A stretch of 64,000 nucleotides of DNA, taken from positions 12,028,001 to 12,092,000 of the forward strand of contig NC_047077.1 of the NCBI RefSeq assembly GCF_902459465.1, given 5' to 3'. A program made the position numbers and the translations under genes. Source of the stretch: Asterias rubens (Eukaryota). Shown in pieces: positions 1 through 39,533 of this stretch. Numbering within the stretch: the first letter of the stretch is position 1; the number at the start of each line of letters is the position of its first letter. The notes under the pieces are model-generated. The model saw only the letters and a program-made list of their open reading frames with translations. It ran no database searches and was not told the origin of the DNA.

Positions 1-559
1 CTACTCGTAGGCCTAGCTCTATGGTGTTAGCTAGAATGGTAGCTCAAGTCAGAATGCCGATCCACTGTGCAAGAAAGCTTTATATAAACACATCTCTCTC
101 TGTCGTTTATAATGTTTGCATGAATCCACACCAACCGATTTCAGCCAATCACGCACAATATTTGGTATGACGTAGACAACTTTATGCATACGTATACTTG
201 TATGGACCACTTTGATTGGCCCTCTGGCCCTGAACGTGCGTCCAATTCGAACATGGCCTAAGCTTTCTATCTGTGTGTTTTGATTGATCTGAGCGAGATG
301 ATGTTTGTCATAGCTGCACACAAATCACCTCGGACCAATCAAAACACAGAAATGGAAAGCTCATGTCACTGAACGTTTATCCAATGAAATCATTATATCC
401 AATGGAAACACTGGTTCTGAAAAGCAAGTAGGCATACCTGTCTGTATCCTTACGGATATAGACAGGGTACCAGTCTACAGAGATTGAAGTTCAGCGTCAA
501 ACGTTATTTGCCATTTGAAAGCCCCCTATGAGGGCGCTCTTACAATCAACATAATTATA

Positions 560-815
560 GGGTGCGTTCGTTTAGCTTCCCTGGGTCATCCTCGGTCTGC
601 CCCGGGTGTCCGAATAGCTTTTGACGTCATTCCAGGGCCTCACCCGGGTTAGCCCCCAGTGCCCTGCTTGTGGAGTGGGTCACTTGGGGGCTGGCCCCAG
701 GTAAACGAAGTCACTACGAGAGCTAGCGGTGAGTGGTCGTTCGTTTAGCTTTTATCAGGGGCTCACCCGAGTGAGCACCGCGGGGTAGACCCAGGGAAGC
801 TAAACGAACGCACCC
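560..815. mobile_element. MITE with GGG-starting terminal inverted repeats (PIF/Harbinger-like); second copy at 42020-42268
   Basis: Left end gggtgcgttcgtttagcttccctgggtc is matched by its reverse complement at 788-815. A homologous element with the same internal sequence lies at 42020-42268. TSD not clean, so the superfamily is tentative. Confidence 0.75.
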
Positions 816-1549
816 ATTATTGTGTTTTTGCATTTGTGGGCGGAAATTCTGTCCCCTGGTGATTCTGTCGCCCACACCGCTTTGTATGTAAAGCTGGGGG
901 GGGGGGGGGGAAGTTGACATTCGATTAGCTCATGTCATTTCTACACTCAACTGTAGATTCGTAACGAATGAATATACACATAATATACGCGTATATTATA
1001 CGCAGTCGATTCGTTACAATCACTATAAAGCATAATGCCTATATTTTGCAAAAATAAACACATCAACAAAAGTAAGTCCCCCTAAATAATTCGCCATAAC
1101 ATCGTAAGGTAAAACATTTTACCATTACAACTAATGTCTTTTATAAAATTTGTATTACAAAGTATGCAATGATAGGTGTATAATCAAAGTTTTAACTCCC
1201 TTCCCCCAAAACGGGATCTCTGCAAAACTCACACAAGCTGCAACAAGTTTCTTTCATAAAAACACTAGTTCAGTTCTTTTATGTAACTCACTTCCATTCA
1301 TAGCTTGACTCGGGCTTGAAAACGTACCTGTTGATATTATAGCGTAACTTGAAGGAACGTAAGCGTAGCTGAGTATCTGCGTAGCTTGGAACAGAACCAA
1401 TTCAAAAATTATATTTTTTTTGACAAAATAATGCTATGATGAAATTTTGTTTTATCATTATTTTTGTTTCAACCCTTTACAAAATTCTTATTCACCTGTC
1501 CGTTTTTTGTTATCATTTTTTCGACTTTGTAAAACATTTTTGAGCTACT

Positions 1550-1837
1550 CACACAATAACATTACTAGAGCTTCTTCCATTTTTTATGGCCACAGATCTT
1601 TTTCTTACGCCGCACCGCTTCTTTGGAATAGTCTTCCTGTGCATATTCGCCAAGCTAATACTTTACAATGTTTTAAGTCCTTGTTGAAAACTCATTTGTT
1701 TAAAGCTTCTTTTTTTGTAATTTGCCTATTTGTATCTTGTATCTTTCTCTAATTGTTTATTTTGTTGTTTCTTTAATGCGCTTAGAGGCTTTTGCATTAG
1801 GCGCTTTACAAATGTCTTATTATTATTATTATTATTA
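1550..1837 (+). mobile_element. 3' end of an L2/CR1-type LINE with (TTA)n tail
   Basis: Translates to GHRSFSYAAPLLWNSLPVHIRQANTLQCFKSLLKTHLF, typical of the L2/CR1 ORF2 C-terminus, followed by an AT-rich UTR and a (tta)n tail. Confidence 0.8.
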
Positions 1838-1861
1838 ATGTAACAAAATGCGGTGAAAAAA

Positions 1862-2524
1862 ATCTCATGAACTAAGTTTCCAAAATCCCGCAAACCAACA
1901 AGGACTGCTGCAAATAAACAATCTCTTAACCATCGCACTATCTCCCTATGGAACAATATTGCGCCAGATGTAAAAGTATTTTCCTAGAAAAGTGCATAAA
2001 AGTTATACGTCAACGGTCCAACTTGCGGGGGCTTGAGGTCAAGGTCAAGATCAACAAACAAGTGACAATAATTCAATCTGTTTCAAGGGTACCAGAGACA
2101 GACCTACAACTTCATGAAGTTTCAACGCTTCATGTGCTTTCTTTTTAAAAATTATTTTAATAATTATTACGGTAAGAATAGCCTTCGCCACTTTGTACTT
2201 GTCAGACTCGACAATATAGAAATCGTGTTAATGAAAGACGGACACAAAATAATAGTCACTTGACACGAAATAAACTTCAGATATTCTTATTAAATATATC
2301 TAAGGGGTATTTACAAAATTTGCAACATAATCAAGGTATAAACTGAATGGCTTCCGGACGTTTGGGTCGCCAGTAACTATTGGTTGTATATCTCCCAATT
2401 TCAAATAAACTTATAAAATATGATACGCTTTACGGAATGGTTCTTGTGCTCCTTCTCACATCAAGGTATAAATATCGCACAACAGTCACAATAAATAAAT
2501 CAATGTATATCGTCTCTATTTGTG
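1862..2524 (+). repeat. ~660 bp direct duplication, copy 1
   Basis: Near-identical to 3618-4279 (offset ~1755), with only a few substitutions seen by eye. Confidence 0.95.
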
Positions 2525-2680
2525 GTTGACATCTCAGGTGTTTTAATGTTTTAATATTGACTAGCTTGGTGATGGTGCTGATGATCATGCAGGGAGCCGT
2601 CCCAAGTTCCGCTGAACGTCTCTGCACCTGCAAGGGGGGGGGGTTGGAGACACGTCGACGGGTTACTGAAGCACGCATCA
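2114..2680 (+). pseudogene. Truncated, frameshifted tectonin-lectin paralogue (exons 2114-2133 and 2565-~2680)
   Basis: ATG AAG TTT CAA CGC TTC AT|gt ... tag|C TTG GTG ATG gives the signal peptide MKFQRFILVMVLMIMQGAVPSSA, with the same phase-2 junction as the five intact genes. It continues ERLCTCK, a G10 run, then in a shifted frame WRHVDGLLKHAS (start of blade 1). Homology ends there. The donor gtgctt is weak. Confidence 0.7.
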
Positions 2681-3617
2681 AGGTCTTCAAATTTTCTAAG
2701 AAACACCTGTGCGTGCTTAGGCATCTGTCCGGCATTGGAACGAGGGAACAAAAAGAAACTCAAAATGTAGGCTAAGTTAAAAACCAGCCATATAACGACC
2801 TTGGTTGCATAGATTCTGTTTAAGGAAAAATACACGGTCAAAAGAAAAATTGATGATGTCAACTTAAAAGAAGTTCTAGTCCAACTCAAATGGTCTGGGT
2901 GCTTTTTGTAAGTTTCTCTTAAATATAACTTACTGATGTGCTATTGTTTTTGAGAAATGGGTAAAATAAAGTACGAAAACAGTTTTCGTTCCTAAAACGA
3001 CAATTATTTTAGCATGTAAAACGTATTTTCGTGGCATTGTTTTACTCGAACTTAACTGTTCACTTCACCCATTTTCATTCCATGCTCAGTTTGTGTTTTT
3101 TTTTTCTTAATTTTTTTTCTCTGCAATTTTTGTATTCCTTGCAATGCGCAGTAGAGTATATATAATAGGTCACTTCGCAATGTACATGTCCGTATTATAT
3201 TATATTTTAAGGTTAGATTTCTACTACCATTATCTTCAAATGGTGTAAGCTTAATGAACATCTTTGGACATTGCTTTTTATGTTACAAAAAGTACCCGGG
3301 ACGATTCAAATGAACCATTCCCCTTCACATGAAACGTTAACTTACCCCCACCCCCCTACCCGGGATGAACTGACTGTTCGTAGAGATACGTCACGACTGG
3401 TTACAATACAATGAAGTTCATGATTGACTCCAAACAACATTAGTCACCTGCAAGTGAAACAACTTCCTTCATCTTTAAGTCACTTCTGAAATCCCACTGT
3501 TTCACTTTCAGGAGACCTATCAATGACTTATTTATTTATTCTGTACCTCAGTACCTTTGAGCAAACCTTGCTTCAGGCGCTTTCTAAACGACGACTAAAA
3601 TTTAAACTCACACGGTT

Positions 3618-4279
3618 ATCTCATGAACTAAGTTTCCAAAATCCCGCAAACCAACAAGGACTGCTGCAAATAAACAATCTCTTAACCATCGCACTATCTC
3701 CCTATGGAACAATTTGCGCCAGATGTAAAAGTATTTTCCTAGAAAAGTGCATAAAAGTTATACGTCAACGGTCCAACTTGCGGGGGCTTGAGGTCAAGGT
3801 CAAGATCAACAAACAAGTGACAATAATTCAATCTGTTTCAAGGGTACCAGAGACAGACCTACAACTCCATGAAGTTTCAACGCTTCATGTGCTTTCTTTT
3901 TAAAAATTATTTTAATAATTATTACGGTAAGAATAGCCTTCGCCACTTTGTACTTGTCAGACTCGACAATATAGAAATCGTGTTAATGAAAGACGGACAC
4001 AAAATAATAGTCACTTGACACGAAATAAACTTCAGATATTCTTATTAATTATATCTTAGGGGTATTTACAAAATTTGCAACATAATCAAGGTATAAACTG
4101 AATGGCTTCCGGACGTTTGGGTCGCCAGTAACTATTGGTTGTATATCTCCCAATTTCAAATAAACTTATAAAATATGATACGCTTTACGGAATGGTTCTT
4201 GTGCTCCTTCTCACATCAAGGTATAAATATCGCACAACAGTCACAATAAACAAATCAATGTATATCGTCTCTCTTTGTG
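3618..4279 (+). repeat. ~660 bp direct duplication, copy 2 (carries a second copy of the ATG micro-exon at 3869-3888)
   Basis: Near-identical to 1862-2524, but not followed by a tectonin exon. Confidence 0.95.
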
Positions 4280-5993
4280 CGTCAATTCTCAAATTACAGG
4301 CAACGTAAAACAAACAAATATATAACCTATGATTAGGGTTCTGCCATACTTAAGCTTTAATAAAATTAATATTGTTAAAAATCATCGTTGCTTTGTTTAA
4401 CTTTCCCCGGTGGCGGACCTCCGTCTTGCGGGTGAATCCCAACCAGCGCCACACTCTGTGTCCCTGCCCGGTGGTCGTCCTTGCGAGCCAGTCAACTTGG
4501 GTACGATGAGGGGTTCGCCGATTCCAGGGGTTAAATGGTCATGGTAGTTAATTGGAGAGGAGTCTTTGGCTTCACACTGCCGTTGCTGAAGAGATTGGTC
4601 AACTCTGACGTACACGCTCTCGGCCATAACTTTGGTTGGCCGGCCCAATACCGATACGGTGGCTGTATCCAACCACTCGCCTGCTGGTTGGGTCGGCAAC
4701 CCTAACACTCACATGCAACACGTCCCCTCTCTCTCAAGCTCACATTGCTTTTAATTTCACAATACGTTTTCAAACTCCACATCAATTTTCCTTTATCCAA
4801 CTGTTTCAATGAAAAAATACAAAGCTTAACAGGGCGTTTCCTGCGCAGTCGACGCGTATGACGTGACAGAAATGCTGCACTGCGAAACATTTACAAGCTG
4901 CAGGTTTGAGGAATTTAAACTATGCCAGATCCAGAAAAGGTAACAATCAAACAATTAAAAACAAATTATCAACAATCGACACTGACAGCACTGGACCTGG
5001 GGCCGATTTAATAAAGAGCTAAGATTGATCGTAAATGTTAACCAATCGTATAGTTGCTTAGTAAAGTGTATGTAACAATACAAATCACTATGGTGATCCC
5101 AACAATTAATTTGTCTTTTACGGTGGATGATAGTGCTGTGTGAAATCGAGTCCTGACGTTTGACGCTATGGAGTACCACTGGTATTAAGTTTACAATTTA
5201 AACATGCGGCGCAGTTACACCAACCTCAATGTGAAAAAAACCTTTTCACAAAATAGTGCTGATCTGTATGTGTGACGCTCCTGACCTAGATTATCCAACT
5301 CACAGCAACACAAAGTAAAGGGCTAGTCACACTGTAGCGATAACGAAAAGCGATAACGATCACGTTAAAAAAAGGCACGCCCTCGATTGGTTGATTAAGT
5401 GTGCGCGTATTCTTGCGGAGCAATTCAACCACCAGTAAAATGCGTTCTCTTTGCGTCGTACTCGTTATCGTTTTCGTTATCGCTGTATAATAGTGCGAAA
5501 ACGGAAAATGTAAATTTTCGTTAATTTTTCGACCACACAAAGTAGCACACATCCTTCTTATTATTTTAAGTCACAATATTAAAATAGCACAGTATCGAAG
5601 TTCAATGCATCAAGTATCCACGCTGTAAGAAAACTACTTGAAAATACCATAACATTTTGAAGAAAAGCTTTTGAATTTAAACTGCGTTAATTTTAAACGC
5701 AGTTTTTCTGCGATTGTTGCTTTGCATTTTAAAAAGACGGTGGTCGCGTTTTTGAGATATCACTGAGAATCCGGGGCGAAAATGCCAATACACAATCTGA
5801 AAGCGTAACAAATATTAAGGCTTCTCAGATTCAAATCTTAAGGGACAGATAAACTAAAAAAAATGTTTCTTTATTTTTTTGTATTTGTATTTCCATATAC
5901 ATATATATATATATATCAAATAATAAACCACAAGGGCTTCTGACAGGCACCCCCGAACAAAGATATTGACAAAATTGGGAGACCACCAACATA

Positions 5994-6090
5994 GGGCTAG
6001 ATAGCTCAGTTGGTAGAGCGCCGGCACGTTAAACCGGAGGTCGTTCGTTCAAATCCCGCTCTAGTCAATTTTCTTTGTTCAATCCAAAAT
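5994..6090 (+). mobile_element. tRNA-derived SINE head
   Basis: A-box tagctcagttgg and degenerate B-box gttcaaatcc, followed by a tail shared with copies at ~11214-11300 and 22148-22226. No intact cloverleaf. Confidence 0.75.
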
Positions 6091-6663
6091 CATATATATA
6101 TATATGTATATATATCCTTTGTCCTCGCCACTTCACTCCTATTGGTTCATAGCCACCAATATTGTCTCTGAAATAGAAACTTTGATTGGCTGTTATTTTC
6201 CCGCTTCTTTCTGGATCCTTTCCTTAATCCCTTTCCCCCTCTCTTTTTCTATAAATGGATATGTATTTGTTTGTACTTGTTTTATGCCTCTGAAGAAGGT
6301 CCGGATTGGATCGAAAGCTAAGGCCATCTACCCTATTCATTATATATATATATATATATTGGTATTCCATAATGCAACAAAAGACATACAAAATTACAGT
6401 AAATCACAAAAAATCGTTGTTGATGGCCATTATACGTGGAAGTGAAATGTTTCTTAAAATGCTTTATGCTACCGAAGCAGTGTTCATAAACAAAGGGTGT
6501 TAATGCTATGAATTTTAAGAGTGGATATCCGAACGTAAACCTGCCCTTTAAATAGTTTGGGTATAGGCCTTTTTTTCAGGACACAATGGTGAAAAGCTAC
6601 CCTTAAAATGTTCCTCGCTGAGGTGCTGTGGTTTTTGAGTAATAACCATTAACGTCCAGTGCC

Positions 6664-7051
6664 TTAAAGACAGTTGACACTATTGGTAATTACTCAAAAT
6701 AATTATTAGCATAAAACCTTGCTTGGTGACGAGTAATGGGGAGAGGTTGATGGTATAAAACATTGTGAGAACGGCTCCCTCTGAAATGACATACTTTTCG
6801 AGAAAGAAATAATTTCCCACGAATTGATTTCGAGACCTAAGATATTGAAATTTGAGGTCTCGAAATCAACCATCTTAAACGCCCACAAGTTCGTGTTACA
6901 AGGGTGTTTTTTTTATTCATTATTATCTCGCAATTTTGACGACCAATATTGAGCTCAAATTTTCACAGGTTTGTTGTTTTATACATGTTGAGATACACCA
7001 AGTGAGAAAACTGGTCTTTGACGATTACGAATAGTGTCCTGTGTCTTTGAA
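6664..7051. mobile_element. TTAA-flanked ~380 bp MITE, family A (Kolobok-like)
   Basis: Ends ttaaagacagttgacactattggtaatt ... gattacgaatagtgtcctgtgtctttgaa. One of more than 20 full or partial copies in the window. Confidence 0.8.
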
Positions 7052-7107: not shown

Positions 7108-7939
7108 TTAATTTGTCCTTTTAACAAAGATATAGTTAGTGTTAGTTGTTCCCCAAATCGTGAGTGACAAGGAGTCCACCTGATTCAAAGCACCCGGGAT
7201 ATTCTGCCAGTCACTCCCCCTCGGGTTAGCAGCGGACACGCCCACTCTAAAATAAATCATATTCCGGTCATTGACCCCGTAGATTCTATCCGCTGAGGTG
7301 ATGTACTTCAGACCACCGTCCACTATGACCCAGTTCAACCCATCGGGATCGGAGTCTGGGTCCCCGTACGTCCCTTCCCTGTAGTAGACGGAACTGGCCG
7401 AGCTAACTCCCCAAACACCACCGCTACCTACCGAGATTTGCTTCATCAAGGTACCCCCAATCTGGCTCCAACTGTCTCCAGCCCTGTTGCATTTGGACGC
7501 TCCAATGCGATGGTAAACGACATCGGTTTCAGATATGCCCCACACGTGGCCCTTCTGACTTACGGTGACGTGTTTAAGGGAGCCTGCCACCTTAACCCAC
7601 ATTGCACCCATCGGGTGACTCCGCCCTATACCCCTACGATAGAACACGTCACGCGTGCTACTCACACCCCAAACGATGTTATTCCCCACATCGACTTGTG
7701 TTAGTCCTTGGCCATCAACTAGCATCCAGCTATCCCCTGCGTCGTTCTCGTTACCGTACGTTTTCTCCCTGTAGTGAACCTGGTTGTTTGCGCTTATGGC
7801 CCACACACCTGCCCGACCGACTGATACTAGTTTAAACCTTCCTTCCAGTTTGGAGAATGAAACCCCGGGGGTTAAACCGCCCTCTATCGGTATTGGTTGT
7901 CTAATGACAATGACCACCACGCAAGATGCCAATAAGATC
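7108..7939 (-). CDS. Secreted tectonin beta-propeller lectin 1, main coding exon (spliced protein 283 aa)
   Basis: Six W-x2-(I/V)-x-G-x-L-K-x-(I/V)-S-V-G...V-W-G-(V/I) tectonin blades. Acceptor tttag|G at 7940/7939. Spliced N-terminus MKLWYQWILLASCVVVIVIRQPIPIEG is signal-peptide-like. The joined CDS is 852 nt, a multiple of 3. Confidence 0.93.
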
Positions 7940-8365
7940 CTAAAGTGAAGACACATGGAGGCAAAAAGAAACTATGAAGTATAGCGCTCTACTAAAGGCA
8001 CATGGACACGCTTGGTATTGTCAAAGAAATGTATTCCCACTTGTTGCATCCCAACATAATGCAAAAATTAAAAAGTTGGTCTCAATAATTATTATTGTTT
8101 ATCGAGTTCGCAAGAGAAGAAAATATACCCTCGTTCCACAAGGTAGTGTGTTTTCAGTTGACTATGTAAAAGACTTTCAGCCACGGTATTTTTTTTATTT
8201 GAGTGTAAAAGTACCTCTTTCTCAAAAACAACGTTAGCTCTTCGGAGAGAGCAGTTTCTCAGTGTTCCCAGCTCCAAGTAAGTTCGTATGCTAAAAATTA
8301 GTCTGAGTAGTTACCAATAAGTACACTAGACAAACTTTCTCTAAACAGTGTGTGTTTCATTCTAT

Positions 8366-15265: not shown

Positions 15266-16055
15266 TTTGGTGTTGCTCCTATGCACTGCGCAGTCCACTT
15301 TGGGGGCGTGGCAGAAAATCGACGGGGGTCTGAAACACGTCTCAGTCGGCCGAGCTGGTGTATGGGGCGTCAACAACAATGACAACATCTACTACCGCAG
15401 AGATACATACGGAGACAATGAAAACCCGGGAACAACCTGGACTCAAATCGCAGGAGGACTGAAACAAGTCGATGTTGGTGACGACATGGTCTGGGGTGTC
15501 AACTCCAATGATGATATCTTCTATCGATCTGACATCAATGAAGGCGATCAAGACGGGGCTGAATGGGTCAAAATTGATGGAAAATTGAAGCATATTAGTG
15601 TCAGCCAAAAGGGGCATGTTTGGGGGGTGAACTCCGGTGATAAGATCTATCACCGTATCGGGGTTAGTGGTTGCAGCAAAGCAGGCTCAAGCTGGAAACT
15701 GATCGCGGGTGGGTTGAAGCAAATTTCAGTTGGTAGCTCGGGTGTTTGGGGAGTCAACTCCGGTGATCAAATCTTCTACCGTCAGGGGACCTTCGGGGAC
15801 CCGGTCGAAGACACCGATGGGTCCGGCTGGACCAATGTGGCTGGCGGTCTCAAGTACATCAGCTCCGCTGAAGTGGTGTATGGTGTCAATGCAGGGGATT
15901 CGATCTACTACCGTGCAGGTGTCTGTGAGGAAACCCCAGTGGGTACATCTTGGGTGCAGATTGCTGGAGGGCTGAAACAGATTGAGTCACTATCACCTGT
16001 TGTCTGGGGCGTCAACTCAAACGCTAATATCTACACAAAAGAAGATGATGCTTAA
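15266..16055 (+). CDS. Secreted tectonin beta-propeller lectin 2, main coding exon (spliced protein 268 aa)
   Basis: Six near-consensus blades (WxQIxGGLKQISVG..GVWGVNSxDxIYYR). Signal peptide MMKFICLVLLLCTAQSTLG. Joined CDS 807 nt. AATAAA at 16120-16125. Confidence 0.95.
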
Positions 16056-24527: not shown

Positions 24528-25386
24528 GTTTGTTGGGATCGTCTGTATCCTGATAGGTGGTATGCAAAGCACCGGAGAAGCTAACTCCCTAGTACACAAT
24601 CGGGTCAGAAGACACGGGCATCATCACTTTCATAACAAGGACCCGTGGAGTGGCCTCGAAGGGTCCTTGAAGCACGTATCGGTCGGTCTGGCAGGAGTGT
24701 GGGGTGTCAACTGTAAGGACCAAATCTACTATAGAGAAGACACGTACGAAGACGAGGTGTTAGGCAGTGATTGGGTTGAGATTGAAGGGAAACTTGTTCA
24801 AGTCGATGTTGGGGATGATGTTGTATGGGGTGTGAACAGTTGTCAAAACATTTACTATCGGGAGGGTATCTTGGGACGGAACCCCACGGGTAATGATTGG
24901 ATCCTCGTAGAGGGAAAATTGAAACACGTCAGCGTCAGTCAACGTGGGCATGTTTGGGGCGTTAACAAACACGATGATATCTACCATCGAATTGGGGCCA
25001 GCTTTTGGAATCCTGGCGGGGACAGCTGGAACAAAATTTGCGGTAAATTGAAGCAAATCTCAGTTGGTGAGGCGGGGGTGTGGGGCGTTAACTCAGCCCA
25101 TAACATATACTATAGGGATGGGACTTTTGGAGATCCAGAGTCGGACCCAAACGGTACTGGCTGGACACAAGTAGGCGGTCAGCTGAATTACATTAGCTCA
25201 GCTGAGAATGTGTACGGAGTGAACTGTAACGGTTGTGTGTTCAAACGTGTAGGCCGGTGTTCTACCAACCCAGTTGGTACAACATGGGAATCTCACCAGG
25301 GATCCCTGAAACAGATTGAATCCTTTTCATTAATGGTGTGGGGAACCAACAAGCATAACAATGTTTACGAGAAGGATCAAGAATGA
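24528..25386 (+). CDS. Secreted tectonin beta-propeller lectin 3, main coding exon (spliced protein 291 aa)
   Basis: Six tectonin blades. The open frame upstream of the ORF-track ATG encodes FVGIVCILIGG, the signal h-region, after branch site gctaac and acceptor aag|G. Joined CDS 876 nt. AATAAA at 25729-25734. Confidence 0.93.
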
Positions 25387-29218: not shown

Positions 29219-30050
29219 TTAGTCTGAATCGGTAACGTAGATGTTATCGCCTGAGTTGACGCCCCAAACAACCGAGGACAGGGACTCAATTTGCTTCAAT
29301 CTGCCGGGAAGGGACCGCCATTGGCTGCCGGTTGGGTTGGAAGCAGATATACCCTCACGAGTGTAGATAACATCAGCAGCATTGACTCCGAAGATCCCTG
29401 TCGCTGAACTGACGTATTTCAAAGCACCAGGGACTCGTTCCCAGGTTGAACCGTTAGGATCTGACGCAGGATCACCGAAGGTTCCCACACGGTAGTAAAT
29501 GCTATCACCGGAGTTGACGCCCCATACTCCCGCATCACCCACCGAGATCTGCTTCAACTTGCCTGATATTTGTTTCCAGCTTCCCTCAGGATAGCAAATA
29601 GATCCCGCGATGCGGTGGTATATATTGTCATTTGAATTGACGCCCCAGACGTGACCATTCTGGCTGACGCTGACGTGTTTCAGAGCTCCAGCCACCTGAA
29701 CCCAAGATGTACCAGTGGGGGATGCATTCGAGATGCCAGCACGATAGTAGATGTTGTCGTTGGAGTTGACGCCCCATGCAACATCCTGACCAACATCGAT
29801 CTGCTTAAGTCTCCCACCTATACTAACCCAAGTAGACCCCCGATTAGCCTCGTCGCCATATGTGCTCACTCTATAGTAGATGACGTCACCACTGTTGACA
29901 CCCCACACGCCGGCTTGACCAATTGAAACATGTTTCAAAGCCCCACCGATCTGTTGCCACGAGATTTGTGTTTCGCTGTCCCTCTTATGCACTTCTTGGT
30001 TGGAAACATGGCTACGTACACCCGTTATTATGCACAGGAGTAGCGTCAAG
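29219..30050 (-). CDS. Secreted tectonin beta-propeller lectin 4, main coding exon (spliced protein 283 aa)
   Basis: Six consensus blades. Acceptor tatgtttag|C at 30050. Signal MAVAIYCLTLLLCIITGVRS. Joined CDS 852 nt. AATAAA (minus strand) at 29135-29140. Confidence 0.95.
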
Positions 30051-30846
30051 CTAAACATAGAGATACGACAGAAAAAAGTTATTTTGTGTAGCGCCCTCTC
30101 TCGGTTTAGTTCTATAGGTTTGTTACAAAGTGGCCGATGTTGAAAATTGTTTGAATATTTGCATTGTGTAGATAAATAGGAAGAAACTATTTTAATTGCA
30201 AAAACTGACTGAAAATGGGGGTGAATACACGTCTACTCCCCCGAGGGACTTTGAATGACATGAACCAGAAATAGGTCCCCCTTACAGGCCCAACAAGGGG
30301 GGGGGGGGGTTAGACGTGCACTAATTACCGAATTATGCCAGTCCGTATGTGTTTTATATTACTCTCACTCTTAAAAGTGAAAAAGAAAACAAGCTGGAAA
30401 AGGAAGGAAGTGTTTTAGTTACTGTTCACGGATAACGTCAAGAGATGGCACTGTAAACCAGTCACGCGATCACATGACTGTATGAGGGAGGTTTAGCTGC
30501 ACGTTAGCGAGCAAAATACTTGAACGTGAACGTCAGAAAATTCTGAAACGTGAAGTATAGCATTTCTCACGTCAGGTACGTACGTGCAGACTTCATACGC
30601 AAGCATAAAATAGGCCCAATGTGGTGACGTCACATAGAAACGACAATGACATACACGATCTCGTTTTTGCTTGCGTATCGTGCAGTTTAAAACCTCCATA
30701 TTAGTTCACCCGACGTGACCGTGTTTCAGCCAACCAGAAAACAAAACAAACAAGAGCGTGTTGTAATATTTTTTTCTGGCTGCTGTTGAGTTCAGTCAAA
30801 CTTGGTATGAAGTTTCGTTTTTTTGGGGTGTGTTTCCAGGACTGGC

Positions 30847-38632: not shown

Positions 38633-39533
38633 CTAATCCGTCTCCTTCACATAAATGTTACCGTTAGTATTGACACCCCAGACGGCAAGTGACAGTGACT
38701 CGATCTGTGACAGTCCCCCTGGAATATTCTGCCAGCCAGTACCCTTCGGTGCCGCAGCAGACACCCCCAGCCTATAATAAATATTGTTGTTAGAATTCAC
38801 CCCATAGATATCGTCGCCTGAGCTGATGTACTTCAAAGCTCCGGATACACGGGTCCAGGTGGAACCGTCAGGATCCGAATCCGGATCGCCGAAAGTCCCC
38901 TCCCTGTAGTAGATGTTATCTGCGGAGTTAACGCCCCATACTCCCCCGCTACCCACCGAAATCTGCTTCAATCCGCCCCCGATCTGACGCCAGTCATTGC
39001 CCAGAACATTACAGTTGCTGGCCCCAAGACGATGGTAAATATTATCGCCTGAGTTTACACCCCAAACATGCCCCTTCTGGCTAACGCTGACGTGCTTCAA
39101 AGCACCACCGACTTGACTCCATCCGGTACCGGTTGGGTTACCAGACGTTATGCCCTGTCGAGCATAGATATTATCGTTACTGTTCACACCCCAGACTACG
39201 TTTTTACCAACATCGAGTTGTGACAGTCCTCCACTGACTTGTATCCAAGAGGCGCCTGTGTTTTGTTCGTTGCCATACGACCCTTCCCTGAAGTAGATAT
39301 TACCGTTTGAGTTAGCTCCCCAAACACCAGACGAGCCGATGGATACGTGGATGAGACCCCCTGGGATGTTCTGCCAACCTAGTCTGGCACACGGACAGAG
39401 TTGCACCGCCTCGTAAGACTTCTCTTCATCTATAACTGTCTCTGCCATGTCGGTGGGGCTTGGGTTTCTTGGTTCGAACCATTTGTCGGGCTGGCTGAAC
39501 ACAATTGGCGTGATCAGCAGCATCAAAACCAAA
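38633..39533 (-). CDS. Secreted tectonin beta-propeller lectin 5, main coding exon (spliced protein 306 aa)
   Basis: Six consensus blades. Acceptor ctaac..ttttttcattcag|T at 39533. Signal MAYKAICLVLMLLITPIVFS. Joined CDS 921 nt. Confidence 0.95.

What the first reader, a model, noticed from the sequence alone, without database searches (positions are those of the whole stretch)
2114..2690. Hidden sixth lectin: frameshift in a G10 run and truncation in blade 1
The ORF track gives a meaningless 72-aa peptide here. Splicing 2114-2133 to 2565 yields MKFQRFILVMVLMIMQGAVPSSA-ERLCTCK. Removing one G from the run at 2634-2643 restores GGG-WRHVDGLLKHAS, which aligns with lectin 5 (LCPCARLG-WQNIPGGLIHVS). 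Homology then stops abruptly at ~2680. This is a recently disabled relative of lectin 5, a misassembly, or a source of a short secreted cationic peptide from the shifted frame.
Basis: partly seen in the sequence, partly recalled or inferred. Interest (0 to 1): 0.7.

Follow-up and report, generated by a model that had tools for sequence, protein, structure and literature searches.

The report
Dead 150-base starfish lectin gene scrap
The supposed hidden sixth lectin is a 150-base scrap copied upside-down from an intact lectin gene 5.9 kb away in the starfish Asterias rubens; it sits at a local rearrangement junction and is an ordinary dead gene fragment, not a gene.

Summary

The interpretation needs correcting.
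- Only window 2531-2680 is lectin-derived: 34 nt of intron tail plus 116 nt of the main coding exon.
- It is 96% identical (E about 1e-62 to 1e-65) to an intact, annotated 281-aa gene, 'lectin L6-like' of Asterias rubens. That gene lies just outside the window on the opposite strand, 5.9 kb away. Lectin 5 is only the nearest in-window relative of that parent (69%).
- Against the parent, the G run carries two substitutions and one extra base.
- Both ends of the patch abut unrelated DNA. The left end joins a 663-bp local duplicate that breaks inside a DNA transposon. The right end joins single-copy sequence.
- The proposed first exon (2114-2133) is not homologous to the parent's real first exon. 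It is one of 12 formally possible ATG-GT solutions, and shuffled sequence gives about 7.
- The shifted-frame peptide has no relative in 5.8 billion proteins.

The best reading is a non-functional, unprocessed gene fragment, probably filler from template-switching repair. Interest is low.

The parts
2531..2680 (+). Lectin-derived patch, an inverted partial copy of the off-window gene 'lectin L6-like' (P0001). Positions 2531-2564 are the last 34 nt of the parent's intron, including its acceptor AG. Positions 2565-2680 are the first 116 nt of the main coding exon: the signal-peptide core, a Cys-x-Cys motif and the first 12 residues of blade 1.
   Evidence: It is 96% identical over 150 columns to G000:C17:12024576-12024724 on the minus strand (E 4.4e-62; E 1.8e-65; base-by-base alignment). 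Positions 2531-2536 are ambiguous between transposon and lectin.
2634..2643 (+). G10 run where the reading frame shifts. The parent has AGGGGGGT at this place. The copy differs by two substitutions and one additional base.
   Evidence: The length was not checked against reads.
1862..2536 (+). R1, a local direct duplicate (99.1%) of 3618-4279. It continues more loosely to about 2536 and ends inside a transposon.
   Evidence: 663 bp, 99.1%. One search finds 6 differences. Searches show that other family members and R2 continue past this point while R1 switches to lectin sequence.
2114..2133 (+). It is not supported as an exon.
   Evidence: It has no homology to the parent's exon 1. It is one of 12 formal solutions, against 7.2 expected from shuffles. 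An identical twin at 3869-3888 has no lectin exon downstream.
2199..2536 (+). The 5' ~330 bp of a ~1.5-kb non-autonomous TIR DNA transposon, truncated at the junction with the lectin patch.
   Evidence: One search finds at least 15 dispersed copies, the closest full-length ones at 88-90% and all starting at this point. Searches give a family length of 1.5 kb with inverted ends TGTCAGACTCGA / TCGACTCTGACA.
2557..2775 (+). Mechanical 72-aa ORF (67 aa from the ATG at 2572). It reads lectin signal-peptide residues, then the shifted frame, then non-genic DNA.
   Evidence: No homologue of comparable length. No Pfam family.
2681..2909 (+). Single-copy sequence to the right of the patch, unrelated to any lectin.
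   Evidence: positions 157-376 of the query match nothing else in the genome. Searches find no lectin remnant.
2910..3297 (.). High-copy short interspersed repeats (MITE-like).
   Evidence: (2185 first-look candidates).
3618..4279 (+). R2, the probable source of R1. Its transposon part continues as a whole element.
3955..4988 (+). Copy of the TIR transposon, internally deleted but with both ends. R1 duplicates only its first ~330 bp.
   Evidence: (alignment of L008:1501-3017 to window 3954-4987).

Best explanation
Window 2531-2680 is a non-functional, unprocessed fragment of a tectonin-type lectin gene. A 150-bp piece of the neighbouring intact gene 'lectin L6-like' (P0001, just outside the window, minus strand) was copied in inverted orientation 5.9 kb away. 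The piece is the intron tail plus the start of the main coding exon.

The patch is joined on its left, across a few ambiguous bases, to a 663-675-bp duplicate of DNA from 1.1 kb downstream. That duplicate breaks inside a DNA transposon. On its right the patch joins single-copy DNA.

The most likely origin (inferred, not shown) is one break-repair or replication event with template switching. This would have filled a gap with two nearby templates: copy of 3618-4291, then copy of the lectin. A whole sixth lectin gene later decaying is less likely.

Since then the G-rich spot has changed by two substitutions and one extra base, which shifts the frame. The patch has no first exon or promoter of its own and encodes no propeller blade, so it makes no lectin. 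The frame shift is immaterial to that conclusion.
For: Shown:
- DNA identity is 96% to the parent over exactly 2531-2680 and nowhere beyond.
- The parent is intact and annotated (P0001, 281 aa, Tectonin PF19193 E 1.2e-61).
- Intron sequence is included, so this is a DNA-level copy and not a retrocopy.
- No other lectin remnant lies in window 1-7000 or between the patch and the parent.
- R1 and R2 are 99.1% identical. R2's transposon continues as in other family members, whereas R1 breaks and runs into lectin sequence, with the 3-nt overlap TCA shared by both templates.
- The candidate exon 1 is not homologous to the parent's exon 1 and is expected by chance.
- The patch occurs once in the genome. 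The only other matches are the parent and one paralogue, so it is not an amplifying element.
- The 67-aa ORF product has no match in the protein collection. No indexed RNA run holds the stretch beyond the share expected from parent-identical words.
- Divergence of the patch (3 events in 144 nt if the G-run cluster counts as one) does not differ from that of R1/R2 (6 in 663; p=0.21). This is compatible with one event.
Against: - The junctions, the G-run length and the absence of transcripts are therefore unverified.
- If the five differences in the patch count separately, it is more diverged than R1/R2 (p=0.03). That would favour two events, or an older lectin copy.
- A 3-nt microhomology is weak evidence for any particular repair mechanism.
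- The inherited acceptor site is intact, so exonisation in some transcript cannot be excluded.
Confidence: 0.85

Rival explanations
1. It is the remnant of a complete inverted duplicate of the parent lectin gene. This would be a true sixth or seventh gene that lost its 5' part (exon 1 and most of the intron) and its 3' 720 bp by later deletions or insertions.
For: The cluster grew by whole-gene duplication: six intact paralogues lie within 45 kb. If the substitutions are counted singly, the patch is more diverged than the flanking R1 duplicate (p=0.03), so the lectin copy could predate the R1 junction.
Against: It needs two independent, clean truncations that leave 96%-identical sequence right up to both edges and nothing beyond. 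The left edge coincides with the broken end of a 99%-identical local duplicate, which one composite event explains more economically.
Confidence: 0.08
2. It is an assembly artefact. Either the 150-bp patch or its junctions are chimeric, or the G run is miscounted.
For: Homopolymer runs of 10 are error-prone in long-read assemblies (general knowledge). The region is repeat-rich.
Against: The patch differs from the parent at isolated positions outside the run (2553 and 2585), so it is not a mis-placed read of the parent. A 663-bp repeat 1.1 kb apart is well within long-read length. Three runs from other samples hold more of the sampled words of 2440-2910 (26-30%) than parent- and R2-identical words can supply (12%; the chance is about 0.001 at the 13 words of the best run and about 0.01 at the 11 of the weakest). 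Which part they hold is unknown. A miscounted G run would leave the truncation untouched.
Confidence: 0.04
3. The fragment is used. One possibility is that the inherited acceptor and the shifted-frame ORF give a short secreted cationic peptide. The other is that transcription across the inverted patch yields RNA antisense to the parent's 5' coding end, which regulates it.
For: The acceptor AG and 34 nt of intron tail are retained, and an ATG at 2572 opens a 67-aa frame. The patch is inverted relative to its parent and lies about 5 kb upstream of the parent's first exon, downstream of lectin 1 on the same strand as both.
Against: No homologue of the peptide exists. It has three cysteines, and its C-terminal 36 residues are read from single-copy non-genic DNA. 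From the ATG at 2572 only a shortened hydrophobic core is left. No RNA run is on record as holding the stretch. The candidate first exon is of chance quality.
Confidence: 0.03

Closest known systems
Duplicated (unprocessed) pseudogene fragments in tandem gene clusters
   Same: It is a DNA-level copy that includes intron sequence, lies next to its parent, and is truncated and frame-shifted.
   Different: It is very short (150 bp), inverted, and sits exactly at the broken end of another local duplicate. This looks more like repair filler than a decayed gene copy.
Templated insertions / template-switching junctions (MMBIR, FoSTeS, synthesis-dependent repair with filler DNA; named from general knowledge)
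   Same: Two nearby templates, one direct and one inverted, are joined with a 3-nt overlap. A cluster of mismatches sits next to the joint at 2525-2533.
   Different: The mechanism is inferred from the product only. No empty site or ancestral state was available.
Tachylectin-1 / Limulus lectin L6 / fish-egg lectin / tectonin six-bladed propeller lectins (Pfam PF19193, PF06462)
   Same: The parent gene belongs here. Its relatives carry these names in public records. The fragment carries the parent's signal-peptide core and the first strand of blade 1.
   Different: The fragment has no complete blade and scores nothing against the Pfam models, so it cannot fold or bind sugar.
Inverted pseudogene fragment beside the phb-type homeobox gene of the same genome (scan note s1-175492)
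   Same: This is another inverted partial copy of a gene a few kb from its parent in Asterias.
   Different: That case has ~490-bp arms and was reported as shared by two species. Its claim was not tested here.

Membership tests
Tectonin / tachylectin-like propeller lectin (PF19193) | Significant match to the Tectonin / Hyd_WA profile | tested here: not met
   The pieces 2566-2643, 2645-2767 and the 67-aa ORF give 0 families at E<=10. The parent P0001 scores 1.2e-61.
Tectonin / tachylectin-like propeller lectin (PF19193) | Complete propeller of about 230-250 residues in one coding exon | tested here: not met
   Lectin homology covers only 116 coding bases and stops at 2680. There is no remnant elsewhere.
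Tectonin / tachylectin-like propeller lectin (PF19193) | The family's gene structure: a 20-nt coding first exon, an intron, then the main exon in the same phase | tested here: not met
   Real first exons were found for the parent, lectin 5 and lectin 1. The fragment keeps the acceptor and phase but has no homologous first exon. The candidate at 2114 is of chance quality.
Unprocessed (duplicated) pseudogene fragment | DNA-level homology to a functional parent that includes non-coding (intron) sequence | tested here: met
   34 nt of intron tail plus 116 nt of exon are 96% identical to the parent.
Unprocessed (duplicated) pseudogene fragment | Disabling lesions relative to the parent | tested here: met
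   There is one extra base in the G run, and truncation on both sides. The run length itself was not verified by reads.
Processed pseudogene (retrocopy) | Intron-less copy, poly-A tail, target-site duplications | tested here: not met
   The intron tail is present and no poly-A follows 2680.
Gene fragment captured and spread by a transposon (Pack-type element) | The captured fragment lies between the element's ends and occurs in several copies | tested here: not met
   The patch lies at a truncated end of the element, not between its inverted ends. It occurs once in the genome.
Expressed small secreted peptide gene | Transcript evidence, or conservation of the reading frame in relatives | tested here: inconclusive
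   No homologue and no RNA holder among indexed runs.

The most novel reading that the evidence does not exclude
The inverted 150-bp patch lies about 5 kb upstream of its parent's first exon and downstream of lectin 1. It could be transcribed, for example by read-through, into RNA antisense to the parent's 5' coding end and so tune expression of that lectin. Alternatively, its intact acceptor and shifted frame could have given birth to a new secreted cationic peptide.
Probability: 0.03. Interest if true: 0.5.

Novelty: new member of a known kind. Interest (0 to 1): 0.08.

Why it matters
It matters little biologically, since small dead gene fragments are common in tandem gene clusters. There are three practical points.
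- The cluster should not be counted as having a sixth lectin here. The additional intact member lies just outside the window (P0001).
- The frame shift is irrelevant to function, so correcting or confirming the G run would change nothing.
- The composite junction (local duplicate broken inside a DNA transposon, plus an inverted gene patch) is a tidy natural example of template-switching repair. Together with the similar inverted fragment noted elsewhere in this genome, it could serve a survey of how such patches arise in echinoderm genomes.

Tried and rejected
- Read evidence. The look-up of sequencing runs was busy twice and then listed runs. Nothing is therefore known from reads about the G run, the junctions or RNA.
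They, or their identical twin at 3889-3924, were read only by local scripts in the closed sandbox: counting ATG/GT, a local alignment of the transposon against window 3401-5400, and the R1/R2 comparison.
- Pfam on the pieces gave nothing. This is uninformative because the pieces are short and lie N-terminal to the region the model scores best.
- The look-up of encoding contigs for P0001 had no record, so public gene calls around the fragment could not be seen.
- Comparing the candidate exon-1 region with real exon-1 regions gave no signal. The real ones do not resemble each other significantly either, so the test only counts against the 96%-identical parent.
- A literature search for Asterias plus tectonin found no papers.
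- Retrocopy was rejected because intron sequence is present. Transposon capture with spread was rejected because the patch is single-copy and outside the element's ends. Kinship with lectin 5 was rejected because the parent is 96% identical at DNA level while blastn finds no lectin 5 match at all.

Full report
**Setting**

The window is G000:C17:12028001-12092000 of a 418-Mb animal genome. Protein matches name the animal as Asterias rubens, which agrees with scan note s1-172700. The window holds five intact single-ORF tectonin-type lectins at 7108-7956(-), 15267-16055(+), 24562-25386(+), 29219-30058(-) and 38633-39532(-). There are no N in the window.

**Checking the observation**

- The run at 2634-2643 is exactly ten G.
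- The mechanical ORF 2557-2775 gives the 72-aa peptide.
- GT follows 2133 and AG precedes 2565.
- Before the run the frame reads LVMVLMIMQGAVPSSAERLCTCKGGG. From 2645 another frame reads WRHVDGLLKHAS and then unrelated residues.
- tblastn with the five in-window lectins sees this only weakly (E 0.6-0.9).
- Pfam sees nothing in the pieces.

On in-window evidence alone the lectin nature would therefore be unproven.

**What it is a copy of**

A whole-genome DNA search with 2525-2900 gave two other matches.

- G000:C17:12024576-12024724 on the minus strand is 96% identical to window 2531-2680.
- A paralogue at C17:12.50 Mb is 90% identical.

The first match lies 3.3 kb before the window start. It belongs to an open 277-aa frame that is 99% identical to the annotated 281-aa protein 'lectin L6-like [Asterias rubens]', P0001. 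P0001 is a full Tectonin-domain protein (PF19193, E 1.2e-61). The two pieces of the fragment match P0001 at 23/26 and 12/12 residues. They match lectin 5 at 4/26 and 5/12. Lectin 5 is only the parent's nearest in-window paralogue, at 69%.

**Anatomy of the patch**

The base-by-base alignment shows homology from 2531-2537 to 2680 and none beyond on either side. The patch comprises:

- the last 34 nt of the parent's intron, with its acceptor;
- the first 116 nt of the main exon.

The differences from the parent are:

- A for C at 2553, in the intron;
- T for C at 2585 (Ile for Thr);
- at the G-rich spot, two substitutions and one additional base, which turn the parent's AGGGGGGT into a run of ten G and shift the frame.

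After 2680 the parent continues with blade 1 (VGRAGMWGVNS...), whereas the copy continues with single-copy DNA. No further lectin remnant exists in window 1-7000 or in the 12 kb to the left.

**The proposed first exon**

P0001 starts MARLLSC. Its first exon is ATGGCACGATTGCTAAGTTG followed by GTAAGT, at G000:C17:12025526-12025507 (minus), about 0.8 kb upstream of the main exon. All members I checked share this layout of 20 coding bases and then an intron in the same phase. Lectin 5 (MAYKAI+C) has it at window 41024-41005. Lectin 1 (MKLWYQ+W) has it at 9461-9442 (orthologous proteins).

Several points count against it:

- It has no similarity to the parent's first exon or its surroundings, although the patch is 96% identical to the parent.
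- Its donor is GTGCTT.
- It is one of 12 formally valid ATG-open-GT solutions in the 669 bases upstream. Shuffled sequence gives 7.2 +/- 4.2, and 99% of shuffles give at least one.
- An identical twin at 3869-3888 has no lectin exon behind it.

I therefore do not regard it as an exon.

**Surroundings**

- Positions 1862-2524 are a 99.1% direct duplicate of 3618-4279, with six differences.
- The second half of that block (from 2199) is the 5' end of a ~1.5-kb non-autonomous DNA transposon. It has 12-bp inverted ends and many dispersed copies, and the four full-length copies compared are 96-98% alike.
- In the downstream copy the element goes on to its other end, at about 4988.
- In the upstream copy it stops at about 2524-2536 and runs into the lectin patch. 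The three bases TCA are shared by both templates, and a small cluster of mismatches sits just before them.
- The downstream block is therefore the likely source and the upstream block the derived copy.
- To the right of the patch come 229 bases of single-copy DNA, then high-copy short repeats.

**Mechanism (inferred)**

About 819 bases (1862-2680) look like a composite insertion made from two nearby templates. One is direct, from 1.1 kb downstream. The other is inverted, from 5.9 kb upstream. This is what template-switching repair or replication leaves behind.

If the three changes in the G-rich spot count as one event, the divergence of the patch (3/144) does not differ from that of the duplicate (6/663; p=0.21). 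Counted singly (5/144), it does differ (p=0.03). A single event is therefore compatible with the data but not proven.

The alternative is a whole inverted gene copy later cut down on both sides. It needs two clean deletions and is less economical. I give it about 8%.

**Function**

- The patch has no promoter or first exon of its own and encodes no complete blade, so it cannot make a lectin whatever the true length of the G run.
- The shifted-frame peptide (67 aa from the ATG at 2572) has no relative of comparable length among 5.8 billion proteins and no Pfam family. More than half of it is read from non-genic DNA.
- No run on record as RNA holds the stretch. The small shares seen fit the 12% of words that are identical to the parent or to the downstream duplicate.
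- Three DNA runs from other samples hold more than that: 26-30%, against a chance of about 0.001 at the 13 words of the best run and about 0.01 at the 11 of the weakest. This hints that at least part of the locus-specific sequence exists in other animals, but not which part.

**Limits**

The G-run length, both junctions and transcription remain untested.
They entered no search tool after and were read only by local scripts.

**Verdict**

It is wrong on the parent, the extent and the first exon. It is an ordinary unprocessed gene fragment, a new instance of a well-known kind, and of low interest.

Noticed in passing
Off-window: G000:C17:12023865-12025526, minus strand (L002:790-1623 is the main exon): An intact additional member of the lectin cluster lies 3.3 kb before the window start: P0001, 'lectin L6-like', 281 aa. 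With the five in-window genes, the cluster has six intact genes in about 45 kb, plus the fragment.
   Followed up: yes
L003:1464-2353 (G000:C17:~12502626-12503515): This paralogue is 90% identical to the fragment at DNA level. Its lectin frame is split into two overlapping ORFs (207 and 107 aa). The public annotation (P0011, 211 aa) skips the middle blades. It is probably a frame-shifted, decaying gene or an assembly slip.
   Followed up: partly
window 3955-4988 and 2199-2536; L008:1501-3017, L010:1502-3020: A ~1.5-kb non-autonomous DNA transposon family with inverted ends TGTCAGACTCGA / TCGACTCTGACA and no long ORF. The four full-length copies compared are 96-98% alike, so it was active recently.
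   Followed up: partly
window 41024-41005(-), 9461-9442(-); G000:C17:12025526-12025507(-): The lectin genes checked keep a tiny first coding exon of exactly 20 bases (six codons plus two bases), followed by a 0.8-1.5-kb intron. The mechanical ORFs in the window therefore miss the true start codons of lectins 1 and 5, and by their acceptor sites probably of 2 and 3.
   Followed up: partly
window 1447-1845 and 3523-3617: Both copies of the 663-bp duplicate are preceded by the 3' end of the same kind of interspersed element (motif GGCGCTTT.. followed by a simple-repeat tail; the ORF reads ...LLWNSLP...FKSLLKTHLFK). This element may have offered homology for the rearrangement.
   Followed up: no
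genome-wide, contig C17: All 12 or so intact loci of this lectin family found with P0001 lie on one contig, C17, between 8.06 and 13.78 Mb. Only two weak matches lie on C1.
   Followed up: no
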